A stretch of 64,000 nucleotides of DNA, from positions 124,001 to 188,000 of IMG/VR virus record IMGVR_UViG_3300013233_000093. The stretch is one strand, 5' to 3'. The translations under genes were made by a program, and so were the position numbers. Below, in pieces: positions 762 through 58,508 of the stretch (position 1 is its first letter; each line of letters begins with the position of its first letter). The notes under the pieces are model-generated. The model made no database searches. It was not told the DNA's origin and worked only from the letters and a program-made list of their open reading frames with translations.

Positions 762-840
762 ACCGTTTATTCAAAACTATATCACTATTATGATAGATAA
801 CGTGTTGTTGTCTTTACTTTAACCAAAGAGAAATAGAATT
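762..840 (+). promoter_or_regulatory. Early promoter cassette copy 1 (promoter + 5' hairpin + RBS)
   Basis: TATTCAAAACTATATCACTATTATGA at 768-793, then agataac-gtgtt-gttgtct hairpin and aaccaaagagaaatagaa leader; core resembles the phiKZ early motif TATATTAC. Confidence 0.85.
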
Positions 841-1413
841 ATGAGTAATTCCACCCAGTCACCTTCCGTCGGTAACCACGTAACCGATATTAAGACAATT
901 AAGATTCGACTGTCCAACGAGGGCGTGATCGAAAACACATGGTCAGATGTGATGAACCGCAAGGTAAGTCTGCCCGAGCCGTCTGATGCACGCCCGTTCT
1001 TAGGAGATAAGCGGGTGTTCGCCCCGCCCGTGTCGTATAGCGACGAACACCGCGTTACATCACAAGCCATCGCCATCATCGATGACTCGGATCAACTGTC
1101 CACAATTTCCAGCGACCCGGTGCATAATAGTGGGACTTTGATCTACGCGCTAGTTCCGTGGTGGATGGCAGGTCATCGGATCACAGACGACCAAGGTCTT
1201 GTCACCTATACAGCAGCAGACGTAATCAATACACTCACCCTACCACGCCTTGGGGAAATTGTAAAACGTTTTGGCGTGGATGTAATTGTAGTCGGGAAGT
1301 ATACATTCCTAACGCAGTCGGACTACGTTCACGACGGCAGTACGATTTGTCGCACAATCGGTGAAGACGGTAACCCTCATGGCGTGTTCTACGTGGCAAC
1401 GCGCGACCTTTAA
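841..1413 (+). CDS. Hypothetical early protein
   Basis: 190-aa ORF bracketed by its own promoter cassette and terminator. Confidence 0.8.
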   Translation: MSNSTQSPSVGNHVTDIKTIKIRLSNEGVIENTWSDVMNRKVSLPEPSDARPFLGDKRVFAPPVSYSDEHRVTSQAIAIIDDSDQLSTISSDPVHNSGTLIYALVPWWMAGHRITDDQGLVTYTAADVINTLTLPRLGEIVKRFGVDVIVVGKYTFLTQSDYVHDGSTICRTIGEDGNPHGVFYVATRDL

Positions 1414-1435
1414 TTAGAAGAGGCGTTTAATTAAC

Positions 1436-1483
1436 AGCCATCTCCCTCTAGAGGGAGATGGCTTACCATGTCTTTTTTATTTT
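1436..1483 (+). terminator. Hairpin terminator
   Basis: agccatctccctc-ta-gagggagatggct followed by catgtc and a T-tract. Confidence 0.8.
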
Positions 1484-1516
1484 CACCGTTTATTCAAAAC
1501 TATATCACTATTATGA
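1484..1516 (+). promoter_or_regulatory. Early promoter copy 2
   Basis: caccgtt + TATTCAAAACTATATCACTATTATGA (1491-1516), upstream of the operon containing the nvRNAP subunit. Confidence 0.85.
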
Positions 1517-1542
1517 ATGATTAATCAATTGGGATTCTTTTA

Positions 1543-3003
1543 ATGATAAACAGAACTGCGAAATACACCTATGGTGAGATGGACGGTACTGACTATAAGA
1601 GAGAGTTGAGAAACACCACAGACCATGCACTGCGCGTTGTAGATGCAAGTGGGCGTACTCAGATACTATCTCCTATAGCCAGGACTCAGTTCGGTAAAAG
1701 TGACGGTTACTTTACCGTGAAGGAAAAACTGTTAGGCAGGGATGCCGGTTCTTATTTAGACATCCCTAAGTTAGACCCGCCTACTGGCGCGGAAACGTGG
1801 ATTGAGATCAAAACGGCGGTGGACGCCTGTACGGTCCTGCAGTCCACTAATGGCATGTATATCGAAGAAGTGGGTTTACATGTATCCACGGTAGACAGTC
1901 GTTCTAGAACCACACATCCGCGCTTTAGTGCGAATCCGTTTAAACAACTAAAGGACAAGCGCGGTGCAGGACTCTCGTTAGAGCTGCTGGATCCGAACTG
2001 TCAGTACGCCACCTACTACGCTAATGTGGGCGGTGTGGTATTTACAGTGATTCCACAGCGTTCACCGGTACCTTCTGAAGATTGCTTACGGCTTACGCGA
2101 TGGGACGGGCGCTCAGGCGACGCAGTCACCACCAAGACAGACGTCATGAAGGCGTTAACCGGTGAGGGCGAGCATGGGATACGGTTATACCAAACCAGTA
2201 TAGACGCCAAGGCGGATGTTAGAAATCCATTGGTCACGGGCAAGGTAAGCGAGTTAGAAACATCCATTGCTAAATCTCGCACCGATAACGAGAAGTTACG
2301 AGAGCTTATTGCTAAGAACAAAGCCAATGCAGAACAGCTTCGCGTAGAAGCAGCCGAGCGAATGGTGAAGTACGAGCAACGCGCTGGACGAGAAAAGGCA
2401 GAAGCGATCGCGGCACGTGAAACAGAGGCACGTAAACACGAAGCACTGATTGCCACAATGCAACACAAGGCATCGTTAGCCGAGTCACGCAGTGTGGAGG
2501 CGGCACGTGTGGCGTCAGAACGCGCTAAGCAGGACGAGGTCAAACGAGTCGAAGCCGTAGCTGCATTAGCAGAGGCGAAACGTGTGGCGGCCGACAAGGC
2601 CAGGCAGGATGAAGTAAAGAGAGCCGAAGCCGTAGCTGCGTTAGCAGAAGCCAAGGCAGAACATCAACGTCGCCATGAGGCGGCCATCAAGAAAGCAGAG
2701 GTGGATTATGAAGCACGATTGGCAAGAGTGACCGCTGAACAAAAACGTGAGGCGAAAGAGGCGCGTGAGAAGTTCGAGAAAGAGCGTGCAGAGATAATTG
2801 CAGCGGAAGTTGCAGAGCAGGTAAACGCAGTAAAAGACAGAGCCCGACGTGAGTTGGAAGCAGAACGCGCGAAACGCCATCGCGCCGAAGAGACCCTTAA
2901 AACCACAGCCCACGCGGTCAAGAAAGAACAGTGGGCCGTGGTTAAGGTTGCCTTAGGCGTGGTAGCAGCAGCATTCGCACTATGGAAAACGTTTGCCACG
3001 TAA
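1543..3003 (+). CDS. Coiled-coil protein with C-terminal hydrophobic anchor
   Basis: 486 aa; long A/E/K/R-rich coiled coil with a duplicated QDEVKRxEAVAALAEAK; hydrophobic C-terminus; lies between MCP and nvRNAP genes. Confidence 0.8.
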   Translation: MINRTAKYTYGEMDGTDYKRELRNTTDHALRVVDASGRTQILSPIARTQFGKSDGYFTVKEKLLGRDAGSYLDIPKLDPPTGAETWIEIKTAVDACTVLQSTNGMYIEEVGLHVSTVDSRSRTTHPRFSANPFKQLKDKRGAGLSLELLDPNCQYATYYANVGGVVFTVIPQRSPVPSEDCLRLTRWDGRSGDAVTTKTDVMKALTGEGEHGIRLYQTSIDAKADVRNPLVTGKVSELETSIAKSRTDNEKLRELIAKNKANAEQLRVEAAERMVKYEQRAGREKAEAIAARETEARKHEALIATMQHKASLAESRSVEAARVASERAKQDEVKRVEAVAALAEAKRVAADKARQDEVKRAEAVAALAEAKAEHQRRHEAAIKKAEVDYEARLARVTAEQKREAKEAREKFEKERAEIIAAEVAEQVNAVKDRARRELEAERAKRHRAEETLKTTAHAVKKEQWAVVKVALGVVAAAFALWKTFAT

Positions 3004-3063
3004 ATTATCATGCACGTTAGTATTCATTAGATCATACTAAGCATCGTAATAGGGAGCGTTTAT

Positions 3064-4647
3064 ATGTTACAATCCGGTTTTATGCAGAGATTAAGGGCAA
3101 CCAAGCCTGTGCTAAATCCTCGTTTATGCGAGGGGTTGGCGCATCATCAATCTCAGACTTATGAGGGGTACATCGACGCCGTGATGAGGGCGGCATCGTC
3201 AGCATGGCCTGAGGCCATAAAGTACATCGGTGCGCGTCGTGCCACCCCTTTGGAGCAACTAGCGGAAGCTTGCCGGGTAAAACGTAGAAAGCGTAACTTT
3301 GAAGTCGCACGCAGCGACTTGTATTTAATGGTGTACGAGTTGGAGTTACATGGTGAGAAACTGAAGCCTCGATTTATGCTGTTGCCCTACATTCGACGTG
3401 GGTCACTTATGCGCATTCGGGCAGCGACGTATCAGATATCACCAGTGGCAGCAGATAACATTCTAACCGTTGGGTTGGATAAGATCTACATGCCAGTAAC
3501 ACGCTCCAAGTTATACTTCCATAAAGTACACGTGCGGTTCAAGGCCAACGGCAAGTTGGTCTCGATGGATACAGTGCATTCGCTTGTCTACAATGTAGAC
3601 AAAAACACACGAAATACGAAGAGACATTCGTTATTAGTGCATTACATTCTTTGCAAAGCAGGCTTAATTGGAGGCCTGAAACGATACTTAGGTATTGATG
3701 TGGTTGTTGGCCACGCAGAGATAAATGAAACAACCTACCCAACAGACAAATGGGTGATATGTGAATCAACAGGCATTGCCCCTAAAGGCATGCGAGATTA
3801 CTATCCTTCAACCCTACGGATTGCTCTGCGTAAAGAAGACGCTACTACGACGAAGCTGAGTATCATCGGCGGGATCTTTTACATAGCGGATCACGAGCCA
3901 GCATTGGTTCTTGCAGAGGAATCTGAGAACATCGCCATGTGGCGAAGGTTGTTGCCACGCTTCATTATGAAGACAGTGGACTCAGAGAAGAAAGCAGCCG
4001 AAAAGATGGAACAGCATTTTGAATCGCTGAACCACTATATGGATGAGCTAGTAAAACAAAGACTTCAACGAGAGGGCATCGCGTGTGATGACATCTATGA
4101 CGTTTTTGCTGATATGTTAACCACTTTCGAAGCTCGGACCTCTTTCGCCTCACCGGCCAATTTGGGAGATAAGCATCTAGAGACCACACGGTTCGTTTTA
4201 TACGACCTGGTAGCTACGATCTTTCAAACAACATTTGCACTCGCTAAGCTCTCTGGGGAGAGGCTTAACAAAAAGAAGGTGGAACAAACACTTGATGGCA
4301 AGTTTCGGTCAGATGCGATCGAACGGCTTTACAAAGCTCATGGGGAAGTCGAGTCAGTAAGTACTCCGACAGACCTCATGGTAACTTCTACAACACGCAA
4401 CCTGGTGCTCCAACACCGGACAACAACTCGCAGCGGCAGCAAGAACGCCGAGATGAGTGATCGTGCGTATGCGTTGCATGCGTCACAAGGACCCGTATGT
4501 GGCTTTGGTCAAATTACCAAATCACAGCCATCTGGCAGGGGATCGATTAACCATTTCTTACCTCTAAGTGAACGTGACGAAGTTGTAATCTTACCCGAGT
4601 TTACAAAAGAGTTAGAAGATCTTGAGAAAAGCATTGGAGTGGAATAA
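3064..4647 (+). CDS. Non-virion RNA polymerase beta subunit, N-terminal part (phiKZ gp123-like)
   Basis: 527 aa; RSDLYL, LLPY..RG, and C-terminal H.SQ...KSQPSGRGSIN motifs; position downstream of MCP. Confidence 0.75.
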   Translation: MLQSGFMQRLRATKPVLNPRLCEGLAHHQSQTYEGYIDAVMRAASSAWPEAIKYIGARRATPLEQLAEACRVKRRKRNFEVARSDLYLMVYELELHGEKLKPRFMLLPYIRRGSLMRIRAATYQISPVAADNILTVGLDKIYMPVTRSKLYFHKVHVRFKANGKLVSMDTVHSLVYNVDKNTRNTKRHSLLVHYILCKAGLIGGLKRYLGIDVVVGHAEINETTYPTDKWVICESTGIAPKGMRDYYPSTLRIALRKEDATTTKLSIIGGIFYIADHEPALVLAEESENIAMWRRLLPRFIMKTVDSEKKAAEKMEQHFESLNHYMDELVKQRLQREGIACDDIYDVFADMLTTFEARTSFASPANLGDKHLETTRFVLYDLVATIFQTTFALAKLSGERLNKKKVEQTLDGKFRSDAIERLYKAHGEVESVSTPTDLMVTSTTRNLVLQHRTTTRSGSKNAEMSDRAYALHASQGPVCGFGQITKSQPSGRGSINHFLPLSERDEVVILPEFTKELEDLEKSIGVE

Positions 4648-6549: not shown

Positions 6550-6558
6550 CTCTTATTA

Positions 6559-6620
6559 ACAGCATAGTACCCAACCACGCCATTACGGCGTGGTTGGTCT
6601 ATGTCCCTTTTTTTTATTTT
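6559..6620. terminator. Bidirectional terminator between convergent genes
   Basis: ccaaccacgcc-attac-ggcgtggttgg; followed by TATGTCCC+T on + and TATGCTGT on -. Confidence 0.85.
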
Positions 6621-7150: not shown

Positions 7151-7160
7151 AGTACGCCAC

Positions 7161-7733: not shown

Positions 7734-7760
7734 GTGTTTCTCCTTGAGTATCAGTCCTCT

Positions 7761-17570: not shown

Positions 17571-17629
17571 CCTCACCGTTTATTCAAAACTATATCACTA
17601 TTATGATGGACAACGTGTTGTTGTCTTTA
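17571..17629 (+). promoter_or_regulatory. Early promoter cassette copy 3
   Basis: cctcaccgtt TATTCAAAACTATATCACTATTATGA tggacaacgtgttgttgtcttta. Confidence 0.9.
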
Positions 17630-22025: not shown

Positions 22026-22214
22026 GTGGGTAGTATGAAATGTGGACTAATGATTTACACGCACAGCGGACTGTGGTCTAGGCCTGTAATGCGGATGTGT
22101 AACGCGTGTAAACAGTTTAACACGTGTACGATAACAGCACTCGAAGTGCGTAACTACAGAAGGAATCGGTTACATGAAGAATCAAACAATCGCGTCTCTG
22201 GAAAACATGCTTAA
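22026..22214 (+). CDS. Possible small protein (CxxC)
   Basis: 62-aa ORF filling the gap before the ligase; AAGGT RBS. Confidence 0.35.
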   Translation: MGSMKCGLMIYTHSGLWSRPVMRMCNACKQFNTCTITALEVRNYRRNRLHEESNNRVSGKHA

Positions 22215-24153
22215 GCAGTTAACGCGCGAGTACACAGAGAACGGCAAGACAGATTTATCCGACGCGGCATTCGACGTGTTGCGTTCTAAGCTGGTGGCAT
22301 TGTACGACGGCAAGGTACCTGCTAAATCCGTGCTAAACGCAGTAGGTGCACCGCCTGCGTTGGGTGTGACTAAAACAGTCACTCGTAAGATTCCCATGGA
22401 GTCGTTAGCGAATGCGTTCTCAGACGAAGACATTCAAACGTTTTGTGATAAGGTACAGCAAGCGTACATAGAAGTACACGGCAAGAACGCTCGTCCAAAG
22501 TACCTTGTGGAGCCTAAGTGGGACGGACTGGCTTGTGAGTTAACATACGAGCCTGGGAAAGAAGTGCGTGCGTCTACACGAGGAGACGGCACGATAGGTG
22601 AGGATATCTCTATCACAGTCGGTAAAATGACTGATTCGATACCCCGTACAATCAAGTTCGATAAGACTTTGACTATTCGAGGCGAGATTGTCATGACCCG
22701 TGCTGACATGGATAAATGGAACAACGACCAGACTTGGGCGCGTAATAAACCATTGGTGTCTCCAAGGTCTGCGGCATCCGGGTCTGTCAAAAAGATGAAC
22801 GATCCGATGTCTAACGAGATAAGACCCTTGAAGTTCATGCCATACGCTTATGTTATCGATGGGTTAGTGCATACCACAGACGTATCCATCACGGATGCGT
22901 TTCCAGCCACTAAAGCACTTACTGCCTTCGGTGGCCACGAGTCCGTAGTGACTGCGTGTCTTACAACACTGTCGTACGCCGGTACTACCGACGATGTGCC
23001 CGATACTGACGGTGTAGTGATAAAGGTAAAGTGTCCTAAGGTACGAGCCTACATGGGGTCTACGTCGCATCACCCCAGATGGGCGATTGCACGTAAATGG
23101 GCACCTGCTAAATCCATTACTCCGTTATTAAGCGTTAGATGGAGCGTAGGTCAGTCTGGCGATATTACACCGGTGGCAGTCCTAGCACCTGTGCAGGTAG
23201 GTGACGTGATGGTGTCGTCCGCACAGTTGTTTAACATGGCACACATCAAGGCGCTTGACTTGATGATCGGCCAAGACGTATACATCCACAGAGCCGGAGA
23301 AGTCGTGCCTGAATTAATCGGCCCTGTCCCTGACACGATTCATAACGATTGTCGTGAGATCAAAGCTCCGATTCGCTGTCCCAGCTGTGGCAGTAAGGTG
23401 GTGGTGGAACCTAAGTCTAGCGTGGTCTCGTGTCCGTATACAGAAGGTTGTCCAGAACAGGTCATTGGTAGATTGTATCGTGCGTTCGGCAAGCATGGCT
23501 TGGATGTAAAAGGCCTCGGAGTCAAAACCTTGCAGCGCTTCTATTTAGAATGTGAGGTTATGCATCCAATAGACTTGCTGGAGTTAGATACGGATGAGTT
23601 GATAAAGGGGTTTGGATCGGCATTGGAGGCGACTAAGTACGTCACCTACTTGATCGCACATGAAGTGCCGTACAACAAGTTTATCTTCGCGTTAGCTATT
23701 CCAGGCGTGGGCAAAAGTTTGTCACTTACTTTGGCAAAACGGTTTAAGACCATCGCCGGTTTATTCACAGCCACTGTAGAAGAGTTAGCGGATCTGCCTG
23801 ACGTAAGTAAGGAATCCGCCGTGAGAATATCGGAGTTTCTACAGGACGAAGATAATTGCGTAACTGCAAATGCAATAACAGACCACGTTCGACTTTCGTA
23901 TACCACGTATCGGGATAACGCATTTTCTCATAAACGGGTGTGTGTAACAGGGTCGTTCTCAGGAGCGTCTAGATCCGAGGTGACTACTGCACTGGAAAAC
24001 TCCAACGCTAAGGTTATGTCTTCTTTAAGCAAACGTGCCGACTACCTTATCATGGGTTCGTCTGGAGTGGGCAAGAAGAAAACCAAAGCGGCTTTGGATT
24101 ATGGCATAGAACTTATCACAGAAGACGAGGTCTATAAGATTTTAGATCTTTAA
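22174..24153 (+). CDS. ligA: NAD-dependent DNA ligase
   Basis: EPKWDG (KxDG), TRGDG, RGE, DGVVIK, PRWAIARK, OB fold, CPSC..C..C zinc finger, HhH repeats, BRCT domain. Confidence 0.97.
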   Translation: MKNQTIASLENMLKQLTREYTENGKTDLSDAAFDVLRSKLVALYDGKVPAKSVLNAVGAPPALGVTKTVTRKIPMESLANAFSDEDIQTFCDKVQQAYIEVHGKNARPKYLVEPKWDGLACELTYEPGKEVRASTRGDGTIGEDISITVGKMTDSIPRTIKFDKTLTIRGEIVMTRADMDKWNNDQTWARNKPLVSPRSAASGSVKKMNDPMSNEIRPLKFMPYAYVIDGLVHTTDVSITDAFPATKALTAFGGHESVVTACLTTLSYAGTTDDVPDTDGVVIKVKCPKVRAYMGSTSHHPRWAIARKWAPAKSITPLLSVRWSVGQSGDITPVAVLAPVQVGDVMVSSAQLFNMAHIKALDLMIGQDVYIHRAGEVVPELIGPVPDTIHNDCREIKAPIRCPSCGSKVVVEPKSSVVSCPYTEGCPEQVIGRLYRAFGKHGLDVKGLGVKTLQRFYLECEVMHPIDLLELDTDELIKGFGSALEATKYVTYLIAHEVPYNKFIFALAIPGVGKSLSLTLAKRFKTIAGLFTATVEELADLPDVSKESAVRISEFLQDEDNCVTANAITDHVRLSYTTYRDNAFSHKRVCVTGSFSGASRSEVTTALENSNAKVMSSLSKRADYLIMGSSGVGKKKTKAALDYGIELITEDEVYKILDL

Positions 24154-29353: not shown

Positions 29354-29416
29354 CCTCACCGTTTATTCAAAACTATATCACTTAAGGGATAGATAACGTG
29401 TTGTTGTCTTTAGACT
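29354..29416 (+). promoter_or_regulatory. Early promoter cassette copy 4
   Basis: cctcaccgtt TATTCAAAACTATATCAC ttaaggg atagataacgtgttgttgtcttta. Confidence 0.85.
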
Positions 29417-32095: not shown

Positions 32096-33532
32096 ATGAG
32101 AGATATATACGCACGTAACATGAGTGTTAACACCGATTCATACAAGGTCACCATGCCACCGCAGTACCCACCAGGTACTACTAACATTTGGGACTACATT
32201 GAATCTCGAGGCGGTCTGTACGATGCCACTTTGTTTTGCGGTATCCAGGCGTACCTCAAAGAGTATCTATCCATTCCCGTGACTAAGGAAATGGTGGATT
32301 TCTCCGAGGTCTTTTGGAAGGCACATGGTGTGCGCTATGATCGTGCCCAGTGGGATTACGTTGTAGAAAACCATGATGGCTTACTGCCTCTGGAGATCAG
32401 AGCGCTTCCAGAAGGCACCGTCTTGAAAACCCGTAACATTCTTGTCAGTGTGGTAAACACAGATGAGAAATGTAAATGGGCTACTACGTGGATCGAGAAG
32501 TCTTTACTGCGTGCTGTATGGTACGCGACATCTGTCGCTACTGTGTCGTACAACATCAAGAAAGACATCGCGCGGTTCTTACGTGACACCTCAGATGCAG
32601 GCATGATGGATCTGCGTTACATGTTACATGACTTTGGTGGACGGGGCGTAAGCTCCTTTGAATCCGCCGGTCTTGGCAGCATGGCGCATGGCTTATGTTT
32701 CGGTGGTACAGATACCCCTGAAGGCATCTTGGCTTCTATGGAGTATTATAACTCCGATGTAGCCAGTCACTCTTTATGGGGGGCTATGGAGCACAGTACG
32801 GTTACGTCTTGGGGCCGCGAAAACGAACGCCTGTCGTATGCAAACATGATCGATGAGTTTGCCGTCCCTAACGGTAAGTTTGCGATGCTGATCGATTCGT
32901 ACGATGTGTTCCACGCTGCACGGGTGATTATCGGTGAAGAGCTTCGCCAAAAGATCATCGACTGCGGCGCGCAGGTGATACTACGTCCTGACTCGGGAGA
33001 TCCTGTAACAGTGATGTTAGAGCTTCTGGAGATCCTGGGTGAGAAGTTTGGATACGACGTCAACAGTAAGGGGTATAAGATGCTCCGTACGGTGAGTTTG
33101 ATCCAAGGCGATGGCGTTTGTCACGATACCATCCTTAAGATGCTACAGGCCATTAAGGACGCTGGATGGGCTACGCTTAATGTAAGTTACGGCATGGGCG
33201 GTGCGCTACTGCAGATTCCAGATCGTGACATGCAGAAGTTTGCCATGAAGTGCAGCGCCATTAAAGTAAACGGTGAGTGGCGTACCGTGTATAAAGATCC
33301 TATCACAGATAAGGGCAAGCGTTCTAAAGCAGGACGTCTCGATCTTGTCAAGGGATGGGATGATACTGCGCGTGACAACTACTTTACCGATGTCATCGGC
33401 GATGAACCGCGCCCCAATAGTCTTTTGCGGACTGTCTGGCGTAACGGCAAGTTGCTGGTGGATGACGATTATAAGATGCTTCGTGATCGCGCCGGGTGGA
33501 ACGACTCCATAGAAGACTTTATAACTCGTTAG
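32096..33532 (+). CDS. nadV: Nicotinamide phosphoribosyltransferase
   Basis: TDSYK, HDFG.RG, MEHSTVTSWG, DSYD, LRPDSGDP, IQGDG, GMGGALLQ, KDPITD.GK.SK.G. Confidence 0.96.
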   Translation: MRDIYARNMSVNTDSYKVTMPPQYPPGTTNIWDYIESRGGLYDATLFCGIQAYLKEYLSIPVTKEMVDFSEVFWKAHGVRYDRAQWDYVVENHDGLLPLEIRALPEGTVLKTRNILVSVVNTDEKCKWATTWIEKSLLRAVWYATSVATVSYNIKKDIARFLRDTSDAGMMDLRYMLHDFGGRGVSSFESAGLGSMAHGLCFGGTDTPEGILASMEYYNSDVASHSLWGAMEHSTVTSWGRENERLSYANMIDEFAVPNGKFAMLIDSYDVFHAARVIIGEELRQKIIDCGAQVILRPDSGDPVTVMLELLEILGEKFGYDVNSKGYKMLRTVSLIQGDGVCHDTILKMLQAIKDAGWATLNVSYGMGGALLQIPDRDMQKFAMKCSAIKVNGEWRTVYKDPITDKGKRSKAGRLDLVKGWDDTARDNYFTDVIGDEPRPNSLLRTVWRNGKLLVDDDYKMLRDRAGWNDSIEDFITR

Positions 33533-33543
33533 ACAATAAGACA

Positions 33544-33579
33544 CGAAGCTGGGATTTCCAGCTTCGGTCTTTTATTTTT
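33544..33579 (+). terminator. Canonical intrinsic terminator
   Basis: cgaagctgg-gattt-ccagcttcg followed by T-rich sequence. Confidence 0.85.
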
Positions 33580-33594
33580 GCTGTGTTGACTAAA

Positions 33595-33643
33595 TATTTA
33601 AAACTATATCACTATTATGATAGATAACGTGTTGTTGTCTTTA
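33595..33643 (+). promoter_or_regulatory. Early promoter cassette copy 5
   Basis: TATTTAAAACTATATCACTATTATGA tagataacgtgttgttgtcttta. Confidence 0.9.
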
Positions 33644-35986: not shown

Positions 35987-36028
35987 TATTCAAAACTATA
36001 TCACTATTATGATAACGATCGTGTTATC
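35987..36028 (+). promoter_or_regulatory. Early promoter cassette copy 6
   Basis: TATTCAAAACTATATCACTATTATGA; hairpin gataac-gatcgt-gttatc. Confidence 0.9.
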
Positions 36029-39942: not shown

Positions 39943-40015
39943 TATTCAAAACTATATCACTATTATGATGGACAACGTGTTGTTGTCTTTACTTTAACCA
40001 AAGAGAAATAGAACT
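39943..40015 (+). promoter_or_regulatory. Early promoter cassette copy 7
   Basis: Nearly identical to 768-840 from promoter through hairpin and RBS to the ATG. Confidence 0.9.
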
Positions 40016-42965: not shown

Positions 42966-43008
42966 TATTCAAAACTATATCACTATTATGATACTTAGGT
43001 AATGTATT
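42966..43008 (+). promoter_or_regulatory. Early promoter copy 8
   Basis: TATTCAAAACTATATCACTATTATGA tacttaggtaat. Confidence 0.9.
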
Positions 43009-43009
43009 G

Positions 43010-43117
43010 ATGGTGTATTTAGTTGTAACGGCGTTTGTGTTGTGGGTACTTGCACTCGCAGTAGGCGTGGTATTCGAGGCGTTTATGTGGGCGTACGATA
43101 AGTTAACAAATCGTTAA
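43010..43117 (+). CDS. Small TM peptide (35 aa, not in ORF track)
   Basis: MVYLVVTAFVLWVLALAVGVVFEAFMWAYDKLTNR; first ORF after the promoter. Confidence 0.55.
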   Translation: MVYLVVTAFVLWVLALAVGVVFEAFMWAYDKLTNR

Positions 43118-43167
43118 CGTGTAATCAACCAGCGACAATCATGTCGCTAAACAGAAGGTATGAAAAA

Positions 43168-44830: not shown

Positions 44831-44870
44831 AATCAAGACTATATTACTACTATGATAACACTTTTGTTAT
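44831..44870 (+). promoter_or_regulatory. Early promoter variant
   Basis: aatcaagacTATATTACtactatga followed by hairpin ataaca-cttt-tgttat. Confidence 0.75.
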
Positions 44871-44896
44871 TGTTACGGATAAAGGTTTGAAGTAAT

Positions 44897-51345: not shown

Positions 51346-51369
51346 TTTGCGTTCGTCTGTATGATAACG

Positions 51370-51406
51370 CTATATTACCTTAGTGAGGCATGCGACCTTG
51401 CATGTT
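51370..51406 (+). promoter_or_regulatory. Early promoter variant
   Basis: cTATATTACcttagtga followed by hairpin gcatgc-gacctt-gcatgt. Confidence 0.6.
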
Positions 51407-51630: not shown

Positions 51631-51632
51631 AA

Positions 51633-52442: not shown

Positions 52443-52460
52443 ATATTGATGTTGGTTAGA

Positions 52461-52513
52461 TAGGTTGACGTTACATACGTCAACCTAGCCTATGTCTTTA
52501 TTTTTTATTTTTT
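52461..52513 (+). terminator. Hairpin + TATGTC + T-tract
   Basis: taggttgacgt-tacat-acgtcaaccta. Confidence 0.8.
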
Positions 52514-53596: not shown

Positions 53597-53607
53597 GGTA
53601 AATAAGA

Positions 53608-54759
53608 ATGAGTATCTTTTATAAGCACCAAGTGTTTGAAGGTAATGCTGAAGTACAGGACATGGCCGTCTCCACCGACGGCACAATGTTGGTGATTGGT
53701 CGACCTGACCTGTCCAGTGTATCCATTTATGAGAAACTGGCTACTGTACCGACCTTTGATGTCCCTGTATCATTAGACATGCCTGAAAGAAGAAACTTCG
53801 GCTATGCAGTGGCGCTATCAGGTGATCTTAATACCATTGCAGTGGGTTACTCAGAAATAGCCGTAGAGGACACCTACATGGCTCCTGAGTTCACCCACGT
53901 GGTTATGTTTATCCGCAATGATCTCGGCAACTGGATTGAAGACGGTGAGGTATCGGTAGGCTTAAACGGAGTAACTCCCGATACGATACGACTGTCGTTC
54001 GACGGACTTACGTTAACCGTGGGCGGCAGTGACCTTGTGTATACACTTATAAAGGATCCCGTGAACGGCGATGTGTTGGATACGGAAGATCTTCCGCTTA
54101 CCGCTCAGTTGTTTGAGCGATCGTTGGCTGATCCTTGGCATGCCGTAAAGGCGGTGCGGGCAGGCAACATAGACGGGCTACAGCAAGCGTTTGGCGGGAA
54201 TGCGTGGACAGTGAATAACGTCGCTGGTGCAGTGGATGAGATGATGGTCTCTACTGAATGGCGTCATGGACCTGTGGCAGGCTGTCGTATGTACAGAGTA
54301 ACGAAGAAAGCCGGTATTTGGACCGCGCCGGTTTTGGATGTATCCGCTATGGGCAGCGACATTGTTATGTCAGACGACATGACTGTAATGATCGTGTCTG
54401 TCACGTCTAACGTGCCACAGGCCGGTTTGTTTCATATGTACGCACGCACTCCAGGCGGTGCGTGGAGTGTGCCTACCGTGATCCTAAAGCCTCCTCTGGC
54501 AGATGACCTGTTGTTTGCCCTTAACCTAGGAATGAGTTCTGATGGATTATGGCAGTCCGCTACAGCAAGGCATTACGATGCGCCATCAGGTAACGTATAC
54601 GTATATAAAGCAGGTGTGTATAACGGACGCATTGTAACCGGAGATGTCACGCGGACTTCGTTTGGTAAAATTACCAGATTGCCCTCATTACCACAGCCCG
54701 TAGTCTACGTGTCGGACGGTTCTAATGTAAACCAGTATACTACTGTATTACCATTATAA
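53608..54759 (+). CDS. Beta-propeller protein (FG-GAP-like)
   Basis: VSTDGTMLVIG, FGYAVALSGDLNTIAVG, LSFDGLTLTVG, MSSDGLW. Confidence 0.8.
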   Translation: MSIFYKHQVFEGNAEVQDMAVSTDGTMLVIGRPDLSSVSIYEKLATVPTFDVPVSLDMPERRNFGYAVALSGDLNTIAVGYSEIAVEDTYMAPEFTHVVMFIRNDLGNWIEDGEVSVGLNGVTPDTIRLSFDGLTLTVGGSDLVYTLIKDPVNGDVLDTEDLPLTAQLFERSLADPWHAVKAVRAGNIDGLQQAFGGNAWTVNNVAGAVDEMMVSTEWRHGPVAGCRMYRVTKKAGIWTAPVLDVSAMGSDIVMSDDMTVMIVSVTSNVPQAGLFHMYARTPGGAWSVPTVILKPPLADDLLFALNLGMSSDGLWQSATARHYDAPSGNVYVYKAGVYNGRIVTGDVTRTSFGKITRLPSLPQPVVYVSDGSNVNQYTTVLPL

Positions 54760-54780
54760 CAATATAAAATCGGAGAGAAG

Positions 54781-55896
54781 ATGACTTACGCAGACAACGT
54801 CCGCAAATGCATAGACATGGACATGAGCGCAGACGGACGCAGTTGCGTTACGCTGGACAGAGTGATGGATAATAAAGACGCCATCGGTACCCTACATCAC
54901 CACACTTTGTTGGGCGGTGAATGGCACAACACCCGTACCTTTCAAATACCCACGTTGTTCAAGACATCTGTGTCGTATGAAACGGTACAGGCCGTGTGTA
55001 TATCAGGAGACGGTAACGTAATGGCTGTGACGACCAATTTCAGTTATCGTGTATACGTCAAATCCTTATACGACGGCAACATTTGGATGCCTGTTATAAC
55101 GCACTCTTATCGATACGATAAGATCGCCACGACACGAGGCGCCAGACCTACGCTAAGTTATACGGGCAACAAGCTTATGCTTTCCCCGATAGGACATACT
55201 CCTAAACGATGTAGGTTAAAACTGGTATACCTCACGGCTAAGTTTGATTACAACCAAGTAGGTAAGTATAATGACTTATCCATAAACCCCACGTTTTACT
55301 GGGATGTAACTAACGTGGCCGTGAGTGAGATAAGTACGAGTTACATCGTCGGGATTATCACAGAAGCCACTGTACGTCAGGCGCGACATAAGGGCAATGG
55401 CGTGTTGCGTGTAGAGGACATCACAGGTCACCTGCAGAAAAAGATCCGTGATGTACGTCTGTACGGACTGTATGTGGAACCACGCAACATTTGCCATCAT
55501 CAAGATGAACGTGAAATGGCGTACATCAATGGCTTAGAAGGTGCGTTACACGTACTGCCATATGACACACAGAAGCAAGTCATCGTGACAGACATGCCGG
55601 ACAATACTGTCGCCACAGGCACGGTGTCTTCCAGCTTAGACGGTGATATCATCGCAGTGAGTGTGTGCAGATCCGGTACATACGGTTTACTCATATTTAA
55701 ACGACGCGGTAGGGTATACGATGTGGCAAGGTTTGTGGATACCAATTCCAACGACGCCATTAACCCGATCGCTGTCTATAAGGTAAGTCCTTGTGGTAAT
55801 CACTTGGACTACAGCGTCCCCACTAAAATAGACCCTGCTACAGGGGAACGTGGGGACTGGACACGCTTACAACTTAACATTGTTGAAAAGGATTAA
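54781..55896 (+). CDS. Beta-propeller protein (divergent)
   Basis: MSADGRSCV, ISGDGNVMAV, LSYTGNKL, SLDGDIIAV, VSPCGNHL. Confidence 0.8.
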   Translation: MTYADNVRKCIDMDMSADGRSCVTLDRVMDNKDAIGTLHHHTLLGGEWHNTRTFQIPTLFKTSVSYETVQAVCISGDGNVMAVTTNFSYRVYVKSLYDGNIWMPVITHSYRYDKIATTRGARPTLSYTGNKLMLSPIGHTPKRCRLKLVYLTAKFDYNQVGKYNDLSINPTFYWDVTNVAVSEISTSYIVGIITEATVRQARHKGNGVLRVEDITGHLQKKIRDVRLYGLYVEPRNICHHQDEREMAYINGLEGALHVLPYDTQKQVIVTDMPDNTVATGTVSSSLDGDIIAVSVCRSGTYGLLIFKRRGRVYDVARFVDTNSNDAINPIAVYKVSPCGNHLDYSVPTKIDPATGERGDWTRLQLNIVEKD

Positions 55897-55898
55897 AC

Positions 55899-56891
55899 AT
55901 GCATACAGAATCAATTCGCATTACCGAGTTAGCTGAGTTCGCAAGTGATACGTTCAGCAGTAATGCAATGGATTTATCCAGTGACGGTAAAACCGTGGTG
56001 ACGATTACACCCGACCAGAAACACGCGGTTGTATTGGTTGTGATGAATAAGCACAGGCGTAAATGGTCTAAGGTCGCAGAAGTGACACTGCACGGATGTA
56101 ACTATGACGATGCCAGTGTAAGCATCAGTCCGGATGGATTGCGTGTTGCGGTGGGTCTACCTGGAGATGACGTTGTGTATGTCTATCGCTTATACGTGCA
56201 CGGCGTGAAACCACTTACATGCATATGTCGTCTACATCGTCCGAACTCCATGATCGTACACGGATTTGGTTGCGTCGTAGCCATTCGATTGGTTAACGAA
56301 AAGTATCGTTTGTTTACGACTGCGTACTGCATGCAAATGCATGCGTATGAATTCGATGATAAAGATGCCGCTAAGTGCGTTCGTACTGGGACGCTGCAAG
56401 CACCTATGACACCTAACGCGTACTACGACATCTTTGCCAATCATGACGGGTCACGTGTCACAGTTATAACAGGATCTACTGCTACCGTGATGACCGGCGA
56501 ATTGATGACATTGGAGATGATTGCGTTACCATCGACTGTGGATCGTGCGTGTGCAGCAGACAGTGACGTGGCCGTGGTCTCTTCTGGAGATAACCTGTAT
56601 CATACACGCTATAATGCAGAGAGCAAGGAGGCCAAGGAGGTGCTAGACGATCCACTGGCCATCAGTGTGGATGTGTCTGCCAACTACGATGGCACGGTCT
56701 TAATAAACGCCATGCGCAGTAAGATGGTGGTGTACGATTATAAAGCCGATCTCGTCACCCATGTGGGGTTGTTACGCCCAGATGTGAACGGGATGACGGG
56801 TAGATGTACTATGGCAGGTGCATCACGTGCATGTGCTGGCATGCATCAGTTACGTGCTGGCGGAAGTGTGTTATCAATAGCGGAATGGTGA
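55899..56891 (+). CDS. Beta-propeller protein (divergent)
   Basis: LSSDGKTVV, ISPDGLRVAVG, ANHDGSRV, ANYDGTVL. Confidence 0.8.
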   Translation: MHTESIRITELAEFASDTFSSNAMDLSSDGKTVVTITPDQKHAVVLVVMNKHRRKWSKVAEVTLHGCNYDDASVSISPDGLRVAVGLPGDDVVYVYRLYVHGVKPLTCICRLHRPNSMIVHGFGCVVAIRLVNEKYRLFTTAYCMQMHAYEFDDKDAAKCVRTGTLQAPMTPNAYYDIFANHDGSRVTVITGSTATVMTGELMTLEMIALPSTVDRACAADSDVAVVSSGDNLYHTRYNAESKEAKEVLDDPLAISVDVSANYDGTVLINAMRSKMVVYDYKADLVTHVGLLRPDVNGMTGRCTMAGASRACAGMHQLRAGGSVLSIAEW

Positions 56892-56892
56892 T

Positions 56893-57810
56893 ATGGATTC
56901 TCAAGTAAGACGCAAGTCCCTTGCTGTGGTGGCGATGAACAAAAAGTTATCGTCTAACATCATCGAGTGCTCCCCCGTAGAACAGATCCGTCTTATGGAC
57001 GGTGAGTTAGACGTGGGCACGGAAGATGTGGTCAGCAGTGGGATCGACCGGGATAACAATGTATACACTGCCAGTATAAAGATGGGTGTGACTGTGGAGG
57101 CGGAATGGTGGCCTGAGACCAACCGTCCCACACCGCCTGACGTCCGCCGTGGAGAGACTGTATGGCTATGGCATACCGGAGACAGTAATAAGTTTTACTG
57201 GGAGTCTACGGGAGCCTATGACGACCTCAGACGTCTAGAGACCATCGTCTTTCGCTTATCTGGATTACCCGATAACGCAGATGAGAAGTTAGATGCCAGT
57301 AATACGTACTGGATAGAATGGTCTACTCATAAGAAGATGGTGACGTTACATACTTCTATGCGTAACGGTGAGAAGGCAGGTTACACATTACAACTTAACA
57401 CGGGTGATGGTCAGGCTACGCTGGAGGATAATGAAGGTAATATAGTTCAGTTGGATACAGCAGCCACACACATCTGGGCGCGTAACATAAAAGACAGCAT
57501 CTTTGAGTTACTTAAAGGTGATATACGCGCGTCCGTCCCAGGCGGGTCGGAGATCTTTATGAAGGACGGAGACATCCTTACTCATAACGGCCATGGCGTA
57601 GAGTTTAACATGGTAGGTGGAAACACAATCCACAAGATGCCAGGTAACTACATCATAAACGCGACGAACATGATCGTGAATGCAAAGACCATGCACAACA
57701 AACCTGTAATTGGCGGAAAGGCCACTTACGGTAAGATCAGTGTAGGAAGCATCTCTGGTGGTAAGGGGTCATTTGGCCTGTTGCTTGCTGGTAAGTTTAA
57801 CTATCCATAG
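56893..57810 (+). CDS. Baseplate central spike-like protein (OB fold + beta-helix)
   Basis: AEW...NR.TPPDVRRGE.V.L....D..KFYW and RRLET motifs of phiKZ-like spikes; repetitive beta C-terminus. Confidence 0.7.
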   Translation: MDSQVRRKSLAVVAMNKKLSSNIIECSPVEQIRLMDGELDVGTEDVVSSGIDRDNNVYTASIKMGVTVEAEWWPETNRPTPPDVRRGETVWLWHTGDSNKFYWESTGAYDDLRRLETIVFRLSGLPDNADEKLDASNTYWIEWSTHKKMVTLHTSMRNGEKAGYTLQLNTGDGQATLEDNEGNIVQLDTAATHIWARNIKDSIFELLKGDIRASVPGGSEIFMKDGDILTHNGHGVEFNMVGGNTIHKMPGNYIINATNMIVNAKTMHNKPVIGGKATYGKISVGSISGGKGSFGLLLAGKFNYP

Positions 57811-57854
57811 ACGGCATACACAGTACCGCATTGCGGTACTGTGTCTTATGCCGT
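57811..57854. terminator. Bidirectional hairpin with TATGCCGT on both strands
   Basis: acggcata / acacagtaccgca-t-tgcggtactgtgt / tatgccgt between convergent genes; no U-tract. Confidence 0.8.
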
Positions 57855-57862
57855 GTATTGTA

Positions 57863-58399
57863 CTACTGTGATATATGCGCCATCAGTTCTTCCAGCTCTT
57901 CCGGATGGTGTATGTTAAACACCGGGATCTTAGCATGATTGGCGACTCGCATCTCTAAGAAGGTGATTGTAGGACTGTACGCGACCACGAATTCAGAACG
58001 TGACTGTGCGCCTACTAACTCTTCATCTCCTAATACAGATAACGTTTTAGCTACTGACTTAAGACGATCTTCTTTAGACCCCCGTAGCAGATTACTGTCA
58101 AGCTTGTTGCTGTCCAAGTGTCGGACTACTTGATGTTCTTCTGTTGTGGTGGGCACCCAGCAATGTGCATTGTGTTGATTCTTGATTCGAGGCGCTGTCT
58201 TAGAATAACTCCATATCTCGTGACTGCCGTTGGCCATTAATGCGCCGTTGACAAACTCCTCTGCGACGCCTTCTGTGCCGTTATGTCTAAGAGTGTAACC
58301 CATCTTAGCCAACCGACTTGAAATGCCGTGTATGGCCTCTGTGATGTGCTTAGGGGCAGACGTCGCGCATCCTGCACCTGTATAGAATTTTTCACTCAT
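57863..58399 (-). CDS. SLOG/DprA-like protein with degenerate motifs
   Basis: FYTGAG...P, RLAKMGYTLR.NG..G..EEF..GA, A....IPVFN. Confidence 0.7.
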   Translation of the reverse strand: MSEKFYTGAGCATSAPKHITEAIHGISSRLAKMGYTLRHNGTEGVAEEFVNGALMANGSHEIWSYSKTAPRIKNQHNAHCWVPTTTEEHQVVRHLDSNKLDSNLLRGSKEDRLKSVAKTLSVLGDEELVGAQSRSEFVVAYSPTITFLEMRVANHAKIPVFNIHHPEELEELMAHISQ

Positions 58400-58468
58400 T
58401 TACTGCGTGCTCCATATGTGGATTTATTAGACATACGATACTTAACTGTGTTCGCTACTATCTACTAT

Positions 58469-58508
58469 CTATATTACTTTAGTGATACTTAGGTAATAAT
58501 ACTTAGGT
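58469..58508 (+). promoter_or_regulatory. Early promoter variant
   Basis: cTATATTACtttagtga tacttaggtaat (same leader start as copy 8). Confidence 0.7.

What the first reader, a model, noticed from the sequence alone, without database searches (positions are those of the whole stretch)
792..58508. Covarying 5'-terminal hairpin downstream of most early promoters
Seen: immediately after the motif the sequence varies but pairing is kept: agataac-gtgtt-gttgtct (copies 1, 4, 5), ggacaac-gtgtt-gttgtct (copies 3, 7), gataac-gatcgt-gttatc (copy 6), ataaca-cttt-tgttat (44855), gcatgc-gacctt-gcatgt (51388) and acttagg..cttaggt (58487). Copies 2 and 8 pair only weakly. The substitutions are G-U compatible or compensatory, which points to RNA-level structure. 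Inference: a 5' stem that protects early mRNA from 5'-dependent decay, aids promoter escape by the virion RNAP, or tags mRNA for export from the early infection compartment.
Basis: partly seen in the sequence, partly recalled or inferred. Interest (0 to 1): 0.6.

Follow-up and report, generated by a model that had tools for sequence, protein, structure and literature searches.

The report
Hairpin-capped early mRNAs of a jumbo phage
An uncultivated phiKZ-like giant phage repeats one early-promoter cassette 31 times, and most of the predicted transcripts begin with a small RNA hairpin whose sequence differs between cassettes but whose pairing and position are kept, most likely a 5' cap-like stem that slows mRNA decay.

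Summary
The window is part of a 222.9-kb phiKZ-like jumbo phage genome assembled from a microbial mat. It encodes homologues of both the virion and the non-virion RNA polymerase.

The motif TATAT(C/T)AC, then 6 nt, then an invariant G, occurs in 31 cassettes, 11 of them in the window. It has the same core as the early promoters of phiKZ and 201phi2-1, where transcription starts 6 nt after the consensus. The G is therefore the predicted +1. This is inferred by homology; no RNA data exist.

In 25 of 31 cassettes a contiguous 7-10 bp stem starts at +1 to +4, against a background chance of 3-4%. Two more cassettes have interrupted stems. At least five or six unrelated stem sequences sit at the same place.

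The stems need G-U pairs that exist only on the sense strand, so selection acts on the RNA.

True covariation is thin. One pair runs U-A / U-G / C-G, four other changes are pair-preserving and none is disruptive. The main evidence is that whole helices have been replaced at a fixed position.

phiKZ, 201phi2-1, AR9 and the nearest long relative show no such enrichment.

The most likely function is protection of long early leaders from 5'-end-dependent decay. This is untested.

The parts
778..813 (+). Cassette 1. Promoter core TATATCAC at 778-785, predicted +1 G at 792. Family A2 hairpin at 795-813 (AGATAAC / GTGTT / GTTGTCT, 3 unpaired 5' nt). A 49-nt leader runs to the ATG at 841.
   Evidence: (-5.8 kcal/mol, z -2.0). 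A strong terminator hairpin with a T-run lies upstream at 700-750.
1501..1546 (+). Cassette 2. Core at 1501-1508, predicted +1 at 1515. No stable 5' hairpin. A short 28-nt leader runs to the ATG at 1543. The operon continues into the nvRNAP gp123 homologue at 3064-4647.
   Evidence: (z +1.6)
17591..17626 (+). Cassette 3. Core at 17591-17598, +1 at 17605. Family A1 hairpin at 17608-17626 (GGACAAC / GTGTT / GTTGTCT).
   Evidence: (-7.7 kcal/mol, z -1.6)
29374..29409 (+). Cassette 4. Core at 29374-29381 with a variant spacer (ttaagg), +1 at 29388. Family A2 hairpin at 29391-29409.
33605..33640 (+). Cassette 5. Core at 33605-33612, +1 at 33619. Family A2 hairpin at 33622-33640. Leader of 76 nt.
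35997..36028 (+). Cassette 6. Core at 35997-36004, +1 at 36011. Family B hairpin at 36011-36028 (GATAAC / GATCGT / GTTATC), which starts at +1.
   Evidence: (-5.2 kcal/mol, z -3.0)
39953..39988 (+). Cassette 7. Core at 39953-39960, +1 at 39967. Family A1 hairpin at 39970-39988. The rest of the leader is nearly identical to that of cassette 1, although the downstream genes are unrelated.
   Evidence: z -2.4
42976..43021 (+). Cassette 8 (family E). Core at 42976-42983, +1 at 42990. No stable hairpin. The leader is only about 20 nt, and its ACTTAGGT element serves as the Shine-Dalgarno sequence for a 35-aa hydrophobic ORF starting at 43009.
   Evidence: z +0.3
44840..44871 (+). Cassette 9. Core TATATTAC at 44840-44847, +1 at 44854. 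Family B2 hairpin at 44854-44871 (GATAACA / CTTT / TGTTATT) starts at +1. It is marginal, with a competing fold.
   Evidence: (-3.7 kcal/mol, z -1.0)
51371..51406 (+). Cassette 10. Core TATATTAC at 51371-51378, +1 at 51385. Family G1 hairpin at 51387-51406 (8 bp, three of them G-U).
   Evidence: -8.0 kcal/mol
58470..58510 (+). Cassette 11 (class II upstream half). Core TATATTAC at 58470-58477, +1 at 58484. Family C hairpin at 58484-58510: the 10-nt direct repeat TACTTAGGTA occurs twice around the loop ATAA and pairs only as sense RNA, through two G-U pairs.
   Evidence: sense -8.5 vs antisense -1.9; z -2.7
58526..58544 (+). Second hairpin of the C-type leader (AGATCTCT / tact / AGAGATC), immediately 5' of the SD AAAGGA. 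The stem is constant and the loop varies among the 7 C cassettes.

Best explanation
The repeated motif is the early promoter of a phiKZ-like (chimallivirus-type) jumbo phage, read by the injected multisubunit virion RNA polymerase. Transcription is predicted to start at the invariant G, 7 nt after TATAT(C/T)AC.

In every cassette whose leader is 42 nt or longer (27 of 31), the first 18-27 nt of the mRNA fold into a short hairpin of 7-10 bp. [quoted passage not shown] Its sequence has been replaced several times (families A, B, B2, C, D, G1 and others), but its position and pairing are kept, and the pairing uses sense-strand G-U pairs. The structure is therefore selected in the RNA.

The most likely job is the classical one of a 5'-terminal stem-loop. 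It hides the triphosphorylated 5' end from pyrophosphohydrolase (RppH-type) and from 5'-end-dependent RNase E/J attack. That would stabilise early messages with long, ribosome-free leaders during host takeover.

Shown here: the cassette, the helix enrichment, the RNA-strand specificity, and the restriction to this lineage.
Inferred: the TSS (by homology) and the function (by analogy).

My sub-confidences: vRNAP early promoter about 0.9; RNA-level selected 5'-proximal hairpin about 0.8; decay protection as the function about 0.45.
For: Promoter identity:
- TATATTAC is the over-represented forward-strand core in phiKZ (33 forward, control 10) and in 201phi2-1 (27 forward, control 0). Both have a purine 6 nt downstream.
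- The AR9 paper states that vRNAP promoters of phiKZ and phiR1-37 have a conserved TSS 6 nt downstream of the consensus, and that the AR9 consensus is followed by 6N and G+1. A review places the motif at about -10.
- In this genome G occupies that position in 31 of 31 cassettes.
- A PWM scan finds no further sites.
- All cassettes lie on the coding strand upstream of ORFs. They precede the nvRNAP gp123 homologue and a probable chimallin followed by the gp55 homologue.
- Homologues of vRNAP gp178 and gp180 are present.

Hairpin:
- 25 of 31 cassettes have a contiguous stem of 7 bp or more starting at +1 to +4. Among all 36 forward TATATYAC sites with a purine at +1 the count is 25 of 36, against a background of 0.033-0.042.
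- Dinucleotide-shuffle z-scores run from -1.6 to -4.7 for the hairpin families. Fisher combination over 9 families gives about 3e-5 (my arithmetic).

RNA level:
- The sense MFE is below the antisense MFE in every family; the background difference is -0.15 +/- 2.6.
- With symmetric scoring, at least 7 G-U pairs stand against 0-1 A-C, where the background share is 0.51.
- Family C is a DNA direct repeat.

Evolution in the A/B/B2 superfamily:
- One pair runs U-A / U-G / C-G. Four further transitions all preserve pairing, and none disrupts it. The loops meanwhile differ completely in sequence and length.
- Copy 59324 lost the A-type 3' arm and pairs in a new register from +1.

Other points:
- Loops are not conserved between families, which fits a generic structural role.
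- The downstream genes are unrelated.
- The four leaders under 40 nt are exactly the ones without a hairpin.
- The principle that 5'-terminal stem-loops stabilise mRNA, and that RppH needs at least 2-3 unpaired 5' nt, is taken from a review and the papers it cites.
Against: - There is no transcript data of any kind. Only a DNA run from a microbial mat holds the sequence, and the metatranscriptome from the same sample has next to none of it.
- The TSS is inferred from phages whose proteins are only about 25-35% identical.
- The hairpins are weak (-3.7 to -8.5 kcal/mol) and individually unremarkable against the genome background (p 0.06-0.55).
- Family A, the commonest, leaves 3 unpaired nt. According to the review read, that may still allow RppH-type enzymes to act.
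- The copies are not independent, since the cassettes are clearly duplicated or homogenised, so copy-level P values are inflated.
- Families A, B, B2 and perhaps D share ancestry, which leaves only about 4-7 independent lineages.
- phiKZ, 201phi2-1 and AR9 do without such hairpins, so the structure is not a general requirement of vRNAP transcripts.
- The host, and therefore its decay machinery, is unknown.
Confidence: 0.5

Rival explanations
1. The hairpin is a structural tag read by a phage or host protein. It would mark virion-RNAP transcripts for selective handling, such as release from the early infection compartment, preferential translation, or timed shut-off or decay of early messages.
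For: The position at the 5' end is fixed. The hairpin is restricted to one promoter class and is present on unrelated genes. The family A stem and loop are as conserved as the promoter core across 11 copies, while sequence just downstream diverges. That would fit sequence-specific recognition for this one family.
Against: Loops and stems share no sequence between families A, B, C, D and G1, so a reader would have to recognise shape alone. No candidate binding protein was identified. Four early cassettes, including the one that heads the nvRNAP-subunit operon, lack the stem. phiKZ, 201phi2-1 and AR9 have no equivalent.
Confidence: 0.15
2. The nascent hairpin acts co-transcriptionally on the virion RNAP. 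It would prevent backtracking, R-loop formation or abortive cycling just after initiation on long untranslated leaders.
For: The stem is the first RNA to emerge from the polymerase. It is found only on long leaders, where no ribosome follows closely. The strand-specific G-U pairing fits any RNA-level role.
Against: A stem spanning +4 to +22 can fold only once the polymerase is about 30 nt downstream, which is after promoter escape. Related vRNAPs work on promoters without such stems. There is no U-tract or pause-like signature.
Confidence: 0.1
3. The structure has no selected RNA function. The stems would be passengers of a promoter cassette that has been duplicated and homogenised by recombination. 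Alternatively they are DNA-level inverted or direct repeats: operators, or recombination sites like the PeSL cassettes of T4-like phages.
For: The cassettes are near-identical repeats in front of unrelated ORFs, often just after terminators. This resembles PeSLs, which mediate modular shuffling. The arms of families A and B are near-palindromes in DNA, and family C is a direct repeat. Each hairpin is energetically modest.
Against: Passengers would not explain 5-6 unrelated helices at the same place, which is significant at the family level. Nor would they explain the exclusive use of G-U rather than A-C mismatches, the sense/antisense energy asymmetry in every family, or fast-changing loops beside pair-preserving stem changes. 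An operator would need a shared half-site, and none is present.
Confidence: 0.12
4. Transcription starts somewhere other than the conserved G, for example downstream of the stem. The hairpin would then be a promoter element, as in the DNA-hairpin promoters of phage N4 virion RNAP.
For: The TSS is not measured here. N4 provides a precedent for a virion RNAP that recognises hairpins (abstracts).
Against: The core, the spacer and the G match phiKZ-type promoters whose TSS is mapped 6 nt downstream of the consensus. The polymerase homologues are multisubunit and not N4-like. The stems depend on G-U pairs, which are poor in DNA. Loop lengths of 3-7 nt and the variable stems do not fit the N4 hairpin as I recall it (5-7 bp stem, 3-nt loop; from memory, not checked against a paper here).
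Confidence: 0.05

Closest known systems
Early (virion-RNAP) promoters of phiKZ-like jumbo phages (phiKZ, 201phi2-1, phiR1-37, AR9)
   Same: The AT-rich core TATATTAC is the same (TATATCAC in 24 of the 31 copies here). So are the A/T-rich upstream flavour (attcaaa...), the 6-nt spacer and the conserved G/purine start, the forward-strand bias, the position in front of early genes, and the presence of vRNAP and nvRNAP homologues.
   Different: In this phage the conserved block runs on into the transcript, and the leaders are long (42-107 nt) and start with a hairpin. In phiKZ (2/30), 201phi2-1 (0/26) and AR9 (1/24) such stems occur at background frequency, and the leaders of 201phi2-1 are visibly short. 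None of the jumbo-phage transcriptome papers I searched for these terms reports a 5' hairpin on early transcripts.
5'-terminal stabiliser stem-loops of bacterial and phage mRNAs (ompA and papA leaders; the stem-loop at the start of T7 phi10 transcripts, the last from my own knowledge)
   Same: A short hairpin sits within 0-3 nt of the 5' end of a long leader. No particular sequence is required, and the hairpin is independent of the downstream gene. This is the architecture reported to block 5'-end-dependent decay (review and references).
   Different: Here the architecture is a genome-wide rule for one promoter class of a phage with its own polymerase. It is predicted only from sequence. Half-lives, the host and its RNases are all unknown.
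PeSL (promoter-early stem-loop) cassettes of T4-like phages
   Same: Small, repeated, conserved cassettes combine an early promoter with a stem-loop. They sit between unrelated, mostly ORFan genes, and are potential substrates for modular shuffling.
   Different: PeSL promoters are sigma70-like, and their GC-rich stem-loop is a terminator for upstream transcription. Here the promoter is of the vRNAP type, and the stem in question lies inside the transcript at +1 to +27, is AT/GU-rich and has no U-tract. Separate terminators precede some cassettes.
Hairpin promoters of coliphage N4 virion RNAP
   Same: A virion-carried polymerase whose early promoters are associated with a small hairpin.
   Different: The N4 enzyme is single-subunit and reads a DNA hairpin upstream of the start (abstracts, plus my own knowledge). 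Here the polymerase homologues are multisubunit, and the stem is downstream of the predicted start and depends on RNA-only G-U pairs.

Membership tests
phiKZ-type virion-RNAP early promoter | Over-represented, strand-biased AT-rich core (TATATTAC-like) upstream of genes | tested here: met
   In the window there are 12 CTATATYAC sites against 1.1 expected, 11 of them on the + strand. There are 31 cassettes genome-wide and no further PWM hits. The same core occurs in phiKZ (33 forward, control 10) and in 201phi2-1 (27 forward, control 0).
phiKZ-type virion-RNAP early promoter | Conserved purine start site 6 nt downstream of the consensus | tested here: inconclusive
   G occupies that position in 31 of 31 cassettes, matching the rule stated. 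The start itself could not be measured, because no RNA run holds the phage.
phiKZ-type virion-RNAP early promoter | [quoted passage not shown] | tested here: met
   BLASTP homologues of PHIKZ178 (33% identity, E 1e-111) and PHIKZ180 (E 3e-96) are present. So are homologues of PHIKZ055, 068 and 071 and of the ORFs at phiKZ 66.6-68.7 kb and 122.2-123.8 kb. The window ORF at 3064-4647 is annotated as an nvRNAP beta subunit in relatives.
phiKZ-type virion-RNAP early promoter | Transcripts appear immediately after infection, without new protein synthesis | not testable with these tools
   The phage is uncultivated and comes from a microbial-mat metagenome.
5'-terminal stabiliser stem-loop (ompA/papA type) | Stem-loop within a few unpaired nucleotides of the mRNA 5' end | tested here: inconclusive
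   There are 0-3 unpaired nt in all hairpin families, counted from the predicted +1. The +1 is inferred, not mapped.
5'-terminal stabiliser stem-loop (ompA/papA type) | Structure, not sequence, is what is kept | tested here: met
   At least 5-6 unrelated stems and loops sit at the same place. Changes within the A/B superfamily preserve pairing. The sense-strand G-U bias is at least 7 G-U against 0-1 A-C.
5'-terminal stabiliser stem-loop (ompA/papA type) | Lengthens mRNA half-life through the 5'-end-dependent pathway (RppH, RNase E/J) | not testable with these tools
   This needs half-life measurements. The host and its RNases are unknown.
PeSL cassette (T4-like phages) | Sigma70-like early promoter | tested here: not met
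   No -35/-10 pair with workable spacing can be read around the core (direct reading). The core matches vRNAP promoters instead.
PeSL cassette (T4-like phages) | The stem-loop is a GC-rich terminator for upstream transcription | tested here: not met
   The stem lies downstream of the predicted start, is AT/GU-rich and has no U-tract. Separate terminators sit upstream of some cassettes.
N4-type hairpin promoter | DNA hairpin upstream of the start, read by a single-subunit virion RNAP | tested here: not met
   The stem is downstream of the predicted +1 and depends on G-U pairs. The polymerase homologues are multisubunit.
Any curated RNA family (Rfam 15) | Match above the gathering score | tested here: not met
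   There are 0 matches in the whole window.

The most novel reading that the evidence does not exclude
The hairpin is not merely a decay shield but an identity mark of virion-RNAP transcripts in this lineage. A shape-specific 5' tag would be read by a phage factor. That factor could release or route early mRNAs from the early infection compartment, give them priority on ribosomes, or spare them from a phage-induced 5'-end-dependent clearance of host mRNA. This would be a phage equivalent of a cap-like self-mark, evolved in one branch of the nucleus-forming jumbo phages.
Probability: 0.1. Interest if true: 0.8.

Novelty: new variant of a known kind. Interest (0 to 1): 0.42.

Why it matters
Early messages of nucleus-forming jumbo phages are made by an injected polymerase in a hostile cytoplasm. 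Little is known about how these messages survive and are handled.

This genome shows a clear, lineage-specific rule: every long early leader starts with a hairpin. The model phages phiKZ, 201phi2-1 and AR9 lack that rule. If the stems stabilise mRNA, they represent a second route to the goal phiKZ reaches with its RNA-degradosome inhibitor Dip (abstract).

The set of natural stem variants is a ready-made panel for testing 5'-end protection. It includes compensated versions, G-U intermediates and a register-shifted copy. The compact cassette of promoter core plus stabilising leader could also be useful for expression from vRNAP-type promoters.

The limits are plain. There is no culture, no RNA data and no close relatives, and the underlying principle of 5' stem-loop stabilisation is old.

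Tried and rejected
- Close relatives carrying the same cassette: none found. Megablast against phages gave no match. The exact 21-mer in viral contigs gave none. The 16-mer in viral contigs gave 18 single chance hits. The 20-mer in metagenome contigs gave 6 single hits in low-GC contigs, which I judged to be chance.
- Relatives found by protein search (nvRNAP beta-N homologue, 44-49% identity). Three of 15 TATATTAC-6N-purine sites have a stem of 7 bp or more at +1 to +4: L043 8861, L044 4776 and G001 98204. Two more have stems at +5/+6. This is suggestive (about 0.02 by my arithmetic), but the sample is too small, and their records could not be searched whole.
- RNA evidence: the only holder is a DNA run from a microbial mat, and the metatranscriptome from the same sample holds next to nothing. 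Read laying was therefore not used. Contigs cannot show 5' ends.
- Formal covariation test: MAFFT cannot align the families. It anchors on GAT and gives a meaningless 5-bp consensus with 0 compensatory pairs. Its other alignment only revealed the GATA duplication that links families A and B. Any structure-guided alignment would be circular. I therefore replaced the requested covariance-model/R-scape test with a position-specific helix-enrichment test and a G-U versus A-C asymmetry test. No covariance model was built.
- Energy against the raw genomic background is not significant for single hairpins (p 0.06-0.55), so I rejected MFE alone as a statistic.
- Gene duplication as the cause of cassette conservation: the downstream proteins show no BLASTP similarity. 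The exception is some small MKL(I/V)K... genes behind C cassettes, seen by eye.
- Sigma70 reading of the TTGAC upstream of some copies: the spacing to any -10-like hexamer is wrong, and most copies lack it.
- Terminator or attenuator reading: no U-tract.
- RNase III site: the stems are too short.
- Ceyssens et al. 2014, the primary phiKZ promoter paper, is not held. The TSS rule is cited second-hand.

Full report
**What the window is.** The window is bases 124001-188000 of a single 222,906-bp virus record with direct terminal repeats and 47.8% GC. The only public run that holds it is a DNA run from a microbial mat. About 55 ORFs have BLASTP homologues in phiKZ, largely in the same order.
- Homologues of the virion RNAP subunits gp178 (33% identity, E 1e-111) and gp180 (E 3e-96) are present.
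- Homologues of the non-virion RNAP subunits gp55, gp68 and gp71 are present, together with the ORFs that correspond to gp74 and gp123. Coordinates were checked; subunit roles come.
- The window ORF at 3064-4647 is the gp123-type nvRNAP subunit and is so annotated in several phages.
- A 633-aa ORF just upstream of the gp55 homologue gives a sub-threshold chimallin hit (19.8 bits against a cut-off of 27).
- No cultured phage is closer than about 31% identity for this subunit. The closest metagenomic contigs are 44-49% identical.

This is therefore a deep, uncultivated branch of the phiKZ-like phages.

**The motif is a virion-RNAP early promoter.** CTATATYAC occurs 12 times in the window against 1.1 expected, 11 of them on the + strand. 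Genome-wide, 31 sites share an extended cassette running roughly from -22 to +3. A PWM built from them finds no others.

The core TATATTAC is also the strand-biased, over-represented early-promoter core of phiKZ (33 forward, control 10) and of 201phi2-1 (27 forward, control 0). In both, a G or A lies 6 nt downstream. The AR9 transcriptome paper states that vRNAP promoters of phiKZ and phiR1-37 have a conserved TSS 6 nt downstream of the consensus, and gives the AR9 consensus as followed by 6N and G+1. A review places the motif around -10.

In this genome the seventh base after the core is G in 31 of 31 cassettes, usually as GAT. I take that G as +1. This is an inference by homology. No RNA data exist, and the primary phiKZ paper was not available.

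**The observation.** Folding from the predicted +1 gives hairpins that begin at +1 to +4 in most cassettes.

| Family | Stem and loop | Stem starts at |
|---|---|---|
| A (11 copies) | (A/G)GA(T/C)AAC, loop GTGTT, GTTGTCT | +4 |
| B (4 copies) | GATAAC, 6-7 nt loop, GTTATC | +1 |
| B2 | GATAACA, loop CTTT, TGTTATT | +1 |
| C (7 copies) | TACTTAGGTA, loop ATAA, TACTTAGGTA | +3 |
| D | GATACACA, loop GCT, TGTGTGTC | +1 |
| G1 | 8 bp built on GCATGC / GCATGT | +3 |

Two cassettes have interrupted stems (59324 and 116286). Four have none: 38393, window 1501, window 42976 and 214130.

**Is it more than chance?** Single hairpins are not remarkable. They range from -3.7 to -8.5 kcal/mol, with shuffle z-scores of -1.0 to -3.0 in the window and p of 0.06-0.55 against random genomic windows. 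The signal is positional recurrence.
- A contiguous stem of 7 bp or more, with a 3-8 nt loop, starting in the first four nucleotides occurs in 3.3% of genomic windows and in 4.2% of windows that begin with GAT. It occurs in 25 of the 31 cassettes.
- Because the cassettes are repeats, I counted families instead. Six of 11 distinct leader types qualify, about 2.5e-6. With the harshest lumping (A, B, B2, D and the hybrid treated as one lineage) 3 of 7 qualify, about 3e-3. Both figures are my arithmetic on the frequencies.
- Fisher combination of the shuffle P values of nine families gives about 3e-5.

**RNA or DNA?** Three results point to RNA.
1. The sense strand folds better than its reverse complement in every family, for example C at -8.5 against -1.9 and D at -9.2 against -3.7. 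In random windows the difference averages -0.15 with sd 2.6.
2. When G-T and A-C are allowed equally, the stems contain at least 7 G-T and no A-C, apart from one A-C in a marginal outer extension of family C. Background stems split 51:49.
3. Family C is a 10-nt direct repeat in DNA. It is self-complementary only through two G-U pairs. For a random 10-mer the chance of this is about 0.375^5, or 0.007 (my arithmetic).

Loops share nothing between families.

**How much covariation?** Less than the title suggests. MAFFT shows that A and B are related by a GATA duplication at +1. In that superfamily one pair exists as U-A (B, B2), U-G (A2, A3) and C-G (A1), which is a full compensatory path. Four other changes are single transitions that keep pairing (A-U/G-U, G-C/G-U, G-U/A-U). 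No change breaks a pair, while the loops differ completely in sequence and length. Copy 59324 has lost the A-type 3' arm and pairs instead from +1 in a new register.

Between superfamilies the helix is simply different. A sequence-based alignment cannot capture that, and a structure-guided alignment would be circular. I therefore did not run a covariance-model test.

**Context.**
- The genes behind the cassettes are unrelated.
- Predicted leaders with a hairpin are 42-107 nt long. The four without are 20, 25, 28 and 37 nt. In family E the ACTTAGG element that forms the C stem elsewhere serves as the Shine-Dalgarno sequence.
- Several cassettes follow strong terminators.
- C-type leaders have a second constant-stem, variable-loop hairpin just before the ribosome-binding site.
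- Rfam has no match in the window.

**Comparison with other phages.** I applied the same test to promoters defined by the same rule.

| Genome | Sites with a stem of 7 bp or more at +1 to +4 | Background |
|---|---|---|
| phiKZ | 2/30 | 0.036 |
| 201phi2-1 | 0/26 | 0.033 |
| AR9 | 1/24 | 0.040 |
| G001 (197-kb relative) | 1/8 | 0.032 |

The three shorter contigs of closer relatives give 2 of 7, plus two stems at +5/+6. These include the syntenic promoter between the capsid gene and the nvRNAP operon in L043. The trait is therefore a speciality of this phage, with perhaps a weaker tendency in its clade. None of the jumbo-phage transcriptome papers I searched for these terms mentions it.

**Mechanism.** The anatomy is that of a 5'-terminal stabiliser stem-loop: a small helix with 0-3 free 5' nucleotides on long leaders, any sequence, any gene, sense RNA only. 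Such stems are reported to protect mRNAs from 5'-end-dependent decay, and RppH-type enzymes need two to three unpaired 5' nucleotides (review and references). phiKZ itself invests in blocking the degradosome with Dip (abstract), so early-mRNA stability is a plausible selective target. I give this function about 0.45.

Rivals:
- A shape-specific protein tag (0.15).
- A co-transcriptional aid to the vRNAP (0.10). Promoter escape itself is unlikely, because the stem can fold only after escape.
- A passenger of cassette duplication, or a DNA-level repeat (0.12). The G-U bias and the multiple helix replacements argue against this.
- A wrong TSS, with an N4-like promoter hairpin (0.05).

**Verdict.** The RNA-level reading is supported. 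'Covarying' is overstated. The 5'-terminal position is inferred and the function is untested. This is a new, lineage-specific variant of two known things: a phiKZ-type early promoter and a 5' stabiliser stem-loop.

Noticed in passing
window 58526-58544; also the C-type cassettes at G000 16191, 34643, 64231, 98455, 121452 and 198929: C-type leaders carry a second hairpin, AGATCTC(T) / 3-6 nt variable loop / (A)GAGATC, immediately 5' of the Shine-Dalgarno AAAGGA. The stem is constant and the loop differs in every copy. It is a possible translational control element.
   Followed up: partly
window 42990-43120: The cassette at 42976 has a leader of only about 20 nt. It runs straight into a 35-aa strongly hydrophobic ORF (MVYLVVTAFVLWVLALAV...) that starts at 43009. 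The ACTTAGGT element, which forms a stem arm in family C, acts here as the ribosome-binding site.
   Followed up: partly
all 31 cassettes (G000 coordinates): There is a perfect split by leader length. All 27 leaders of 42 nt or more have a 5' hairpin. The four leaders of 20-37 nt have none.
   Followed up: yes
G000 66901, 68599, 91474 (+) and 200996 (-), outside the window: There are four copies of another repeat: a terminator hairpin GATCAGCTCC/ttaa/GGAGCTGATC, then tcgTATATTAC, then a roughly 9-nt leader and paralogous ORFs whose DNA translates by eye to about MDS..V.ELEYAELVL. They have no 5' hairpin and score below the PWM threshold. Whether they are promoters is open.
   Followed up: no
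window 3064-4647; G000 71497-73398: The window ORF is the homologue of phiKZ gp123 (nvRNAP beta N-terminal part) and lies downstream of cassettes 1 and 2. The D-hairpin cassette at G000 71406 heads a 633-aa ORF with a sub-threshold chimallin hit (19.8 bits, cut-off 27), directly upstream of the gp55 homologue.
   Followed up: partly
window 792-801 versus 36011-36016: Families A and B differ by a GATA duplication at the transcript start (GATA-GATAAC versus GATAAC). This moves the same stem from +1 to +4/+5 and suggests slippage at the initiation region.
   Followed up: partly
window 700-750, 1440-1490, 33540-33590: Strong terminator-like hairpins followed by T-runs sit just upstream of several cassettes, for example -25 kcal/mol at 700-730. 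The units therefore read terminator, promoter, 5' hairpin, which resembles PeSL-like modular cassettes.
   Followed up: partly
window 22174-24153 and 32096-33532: An NAD-dependent DNA ligase and a nicotinamide phosphoribosyltransferase (PHROG E-values of 1e-130) are encoded in the early region. This points to phage-borne NAD salvage.
   Followed up: no
G001 (IMGVR_UViG_3300009408_000001) 193255; phiKZ 45568: The relative G001 starts one predicted early transcript with GATACTTAGG, the same first 10 nt as families C and E here, but without a second arm. In phiKZ the early promoter in front of the chimallin gene PHIKZ054 is one of the few with a structured 5' end (-8.8 kcal/mol).
   Followed up: no
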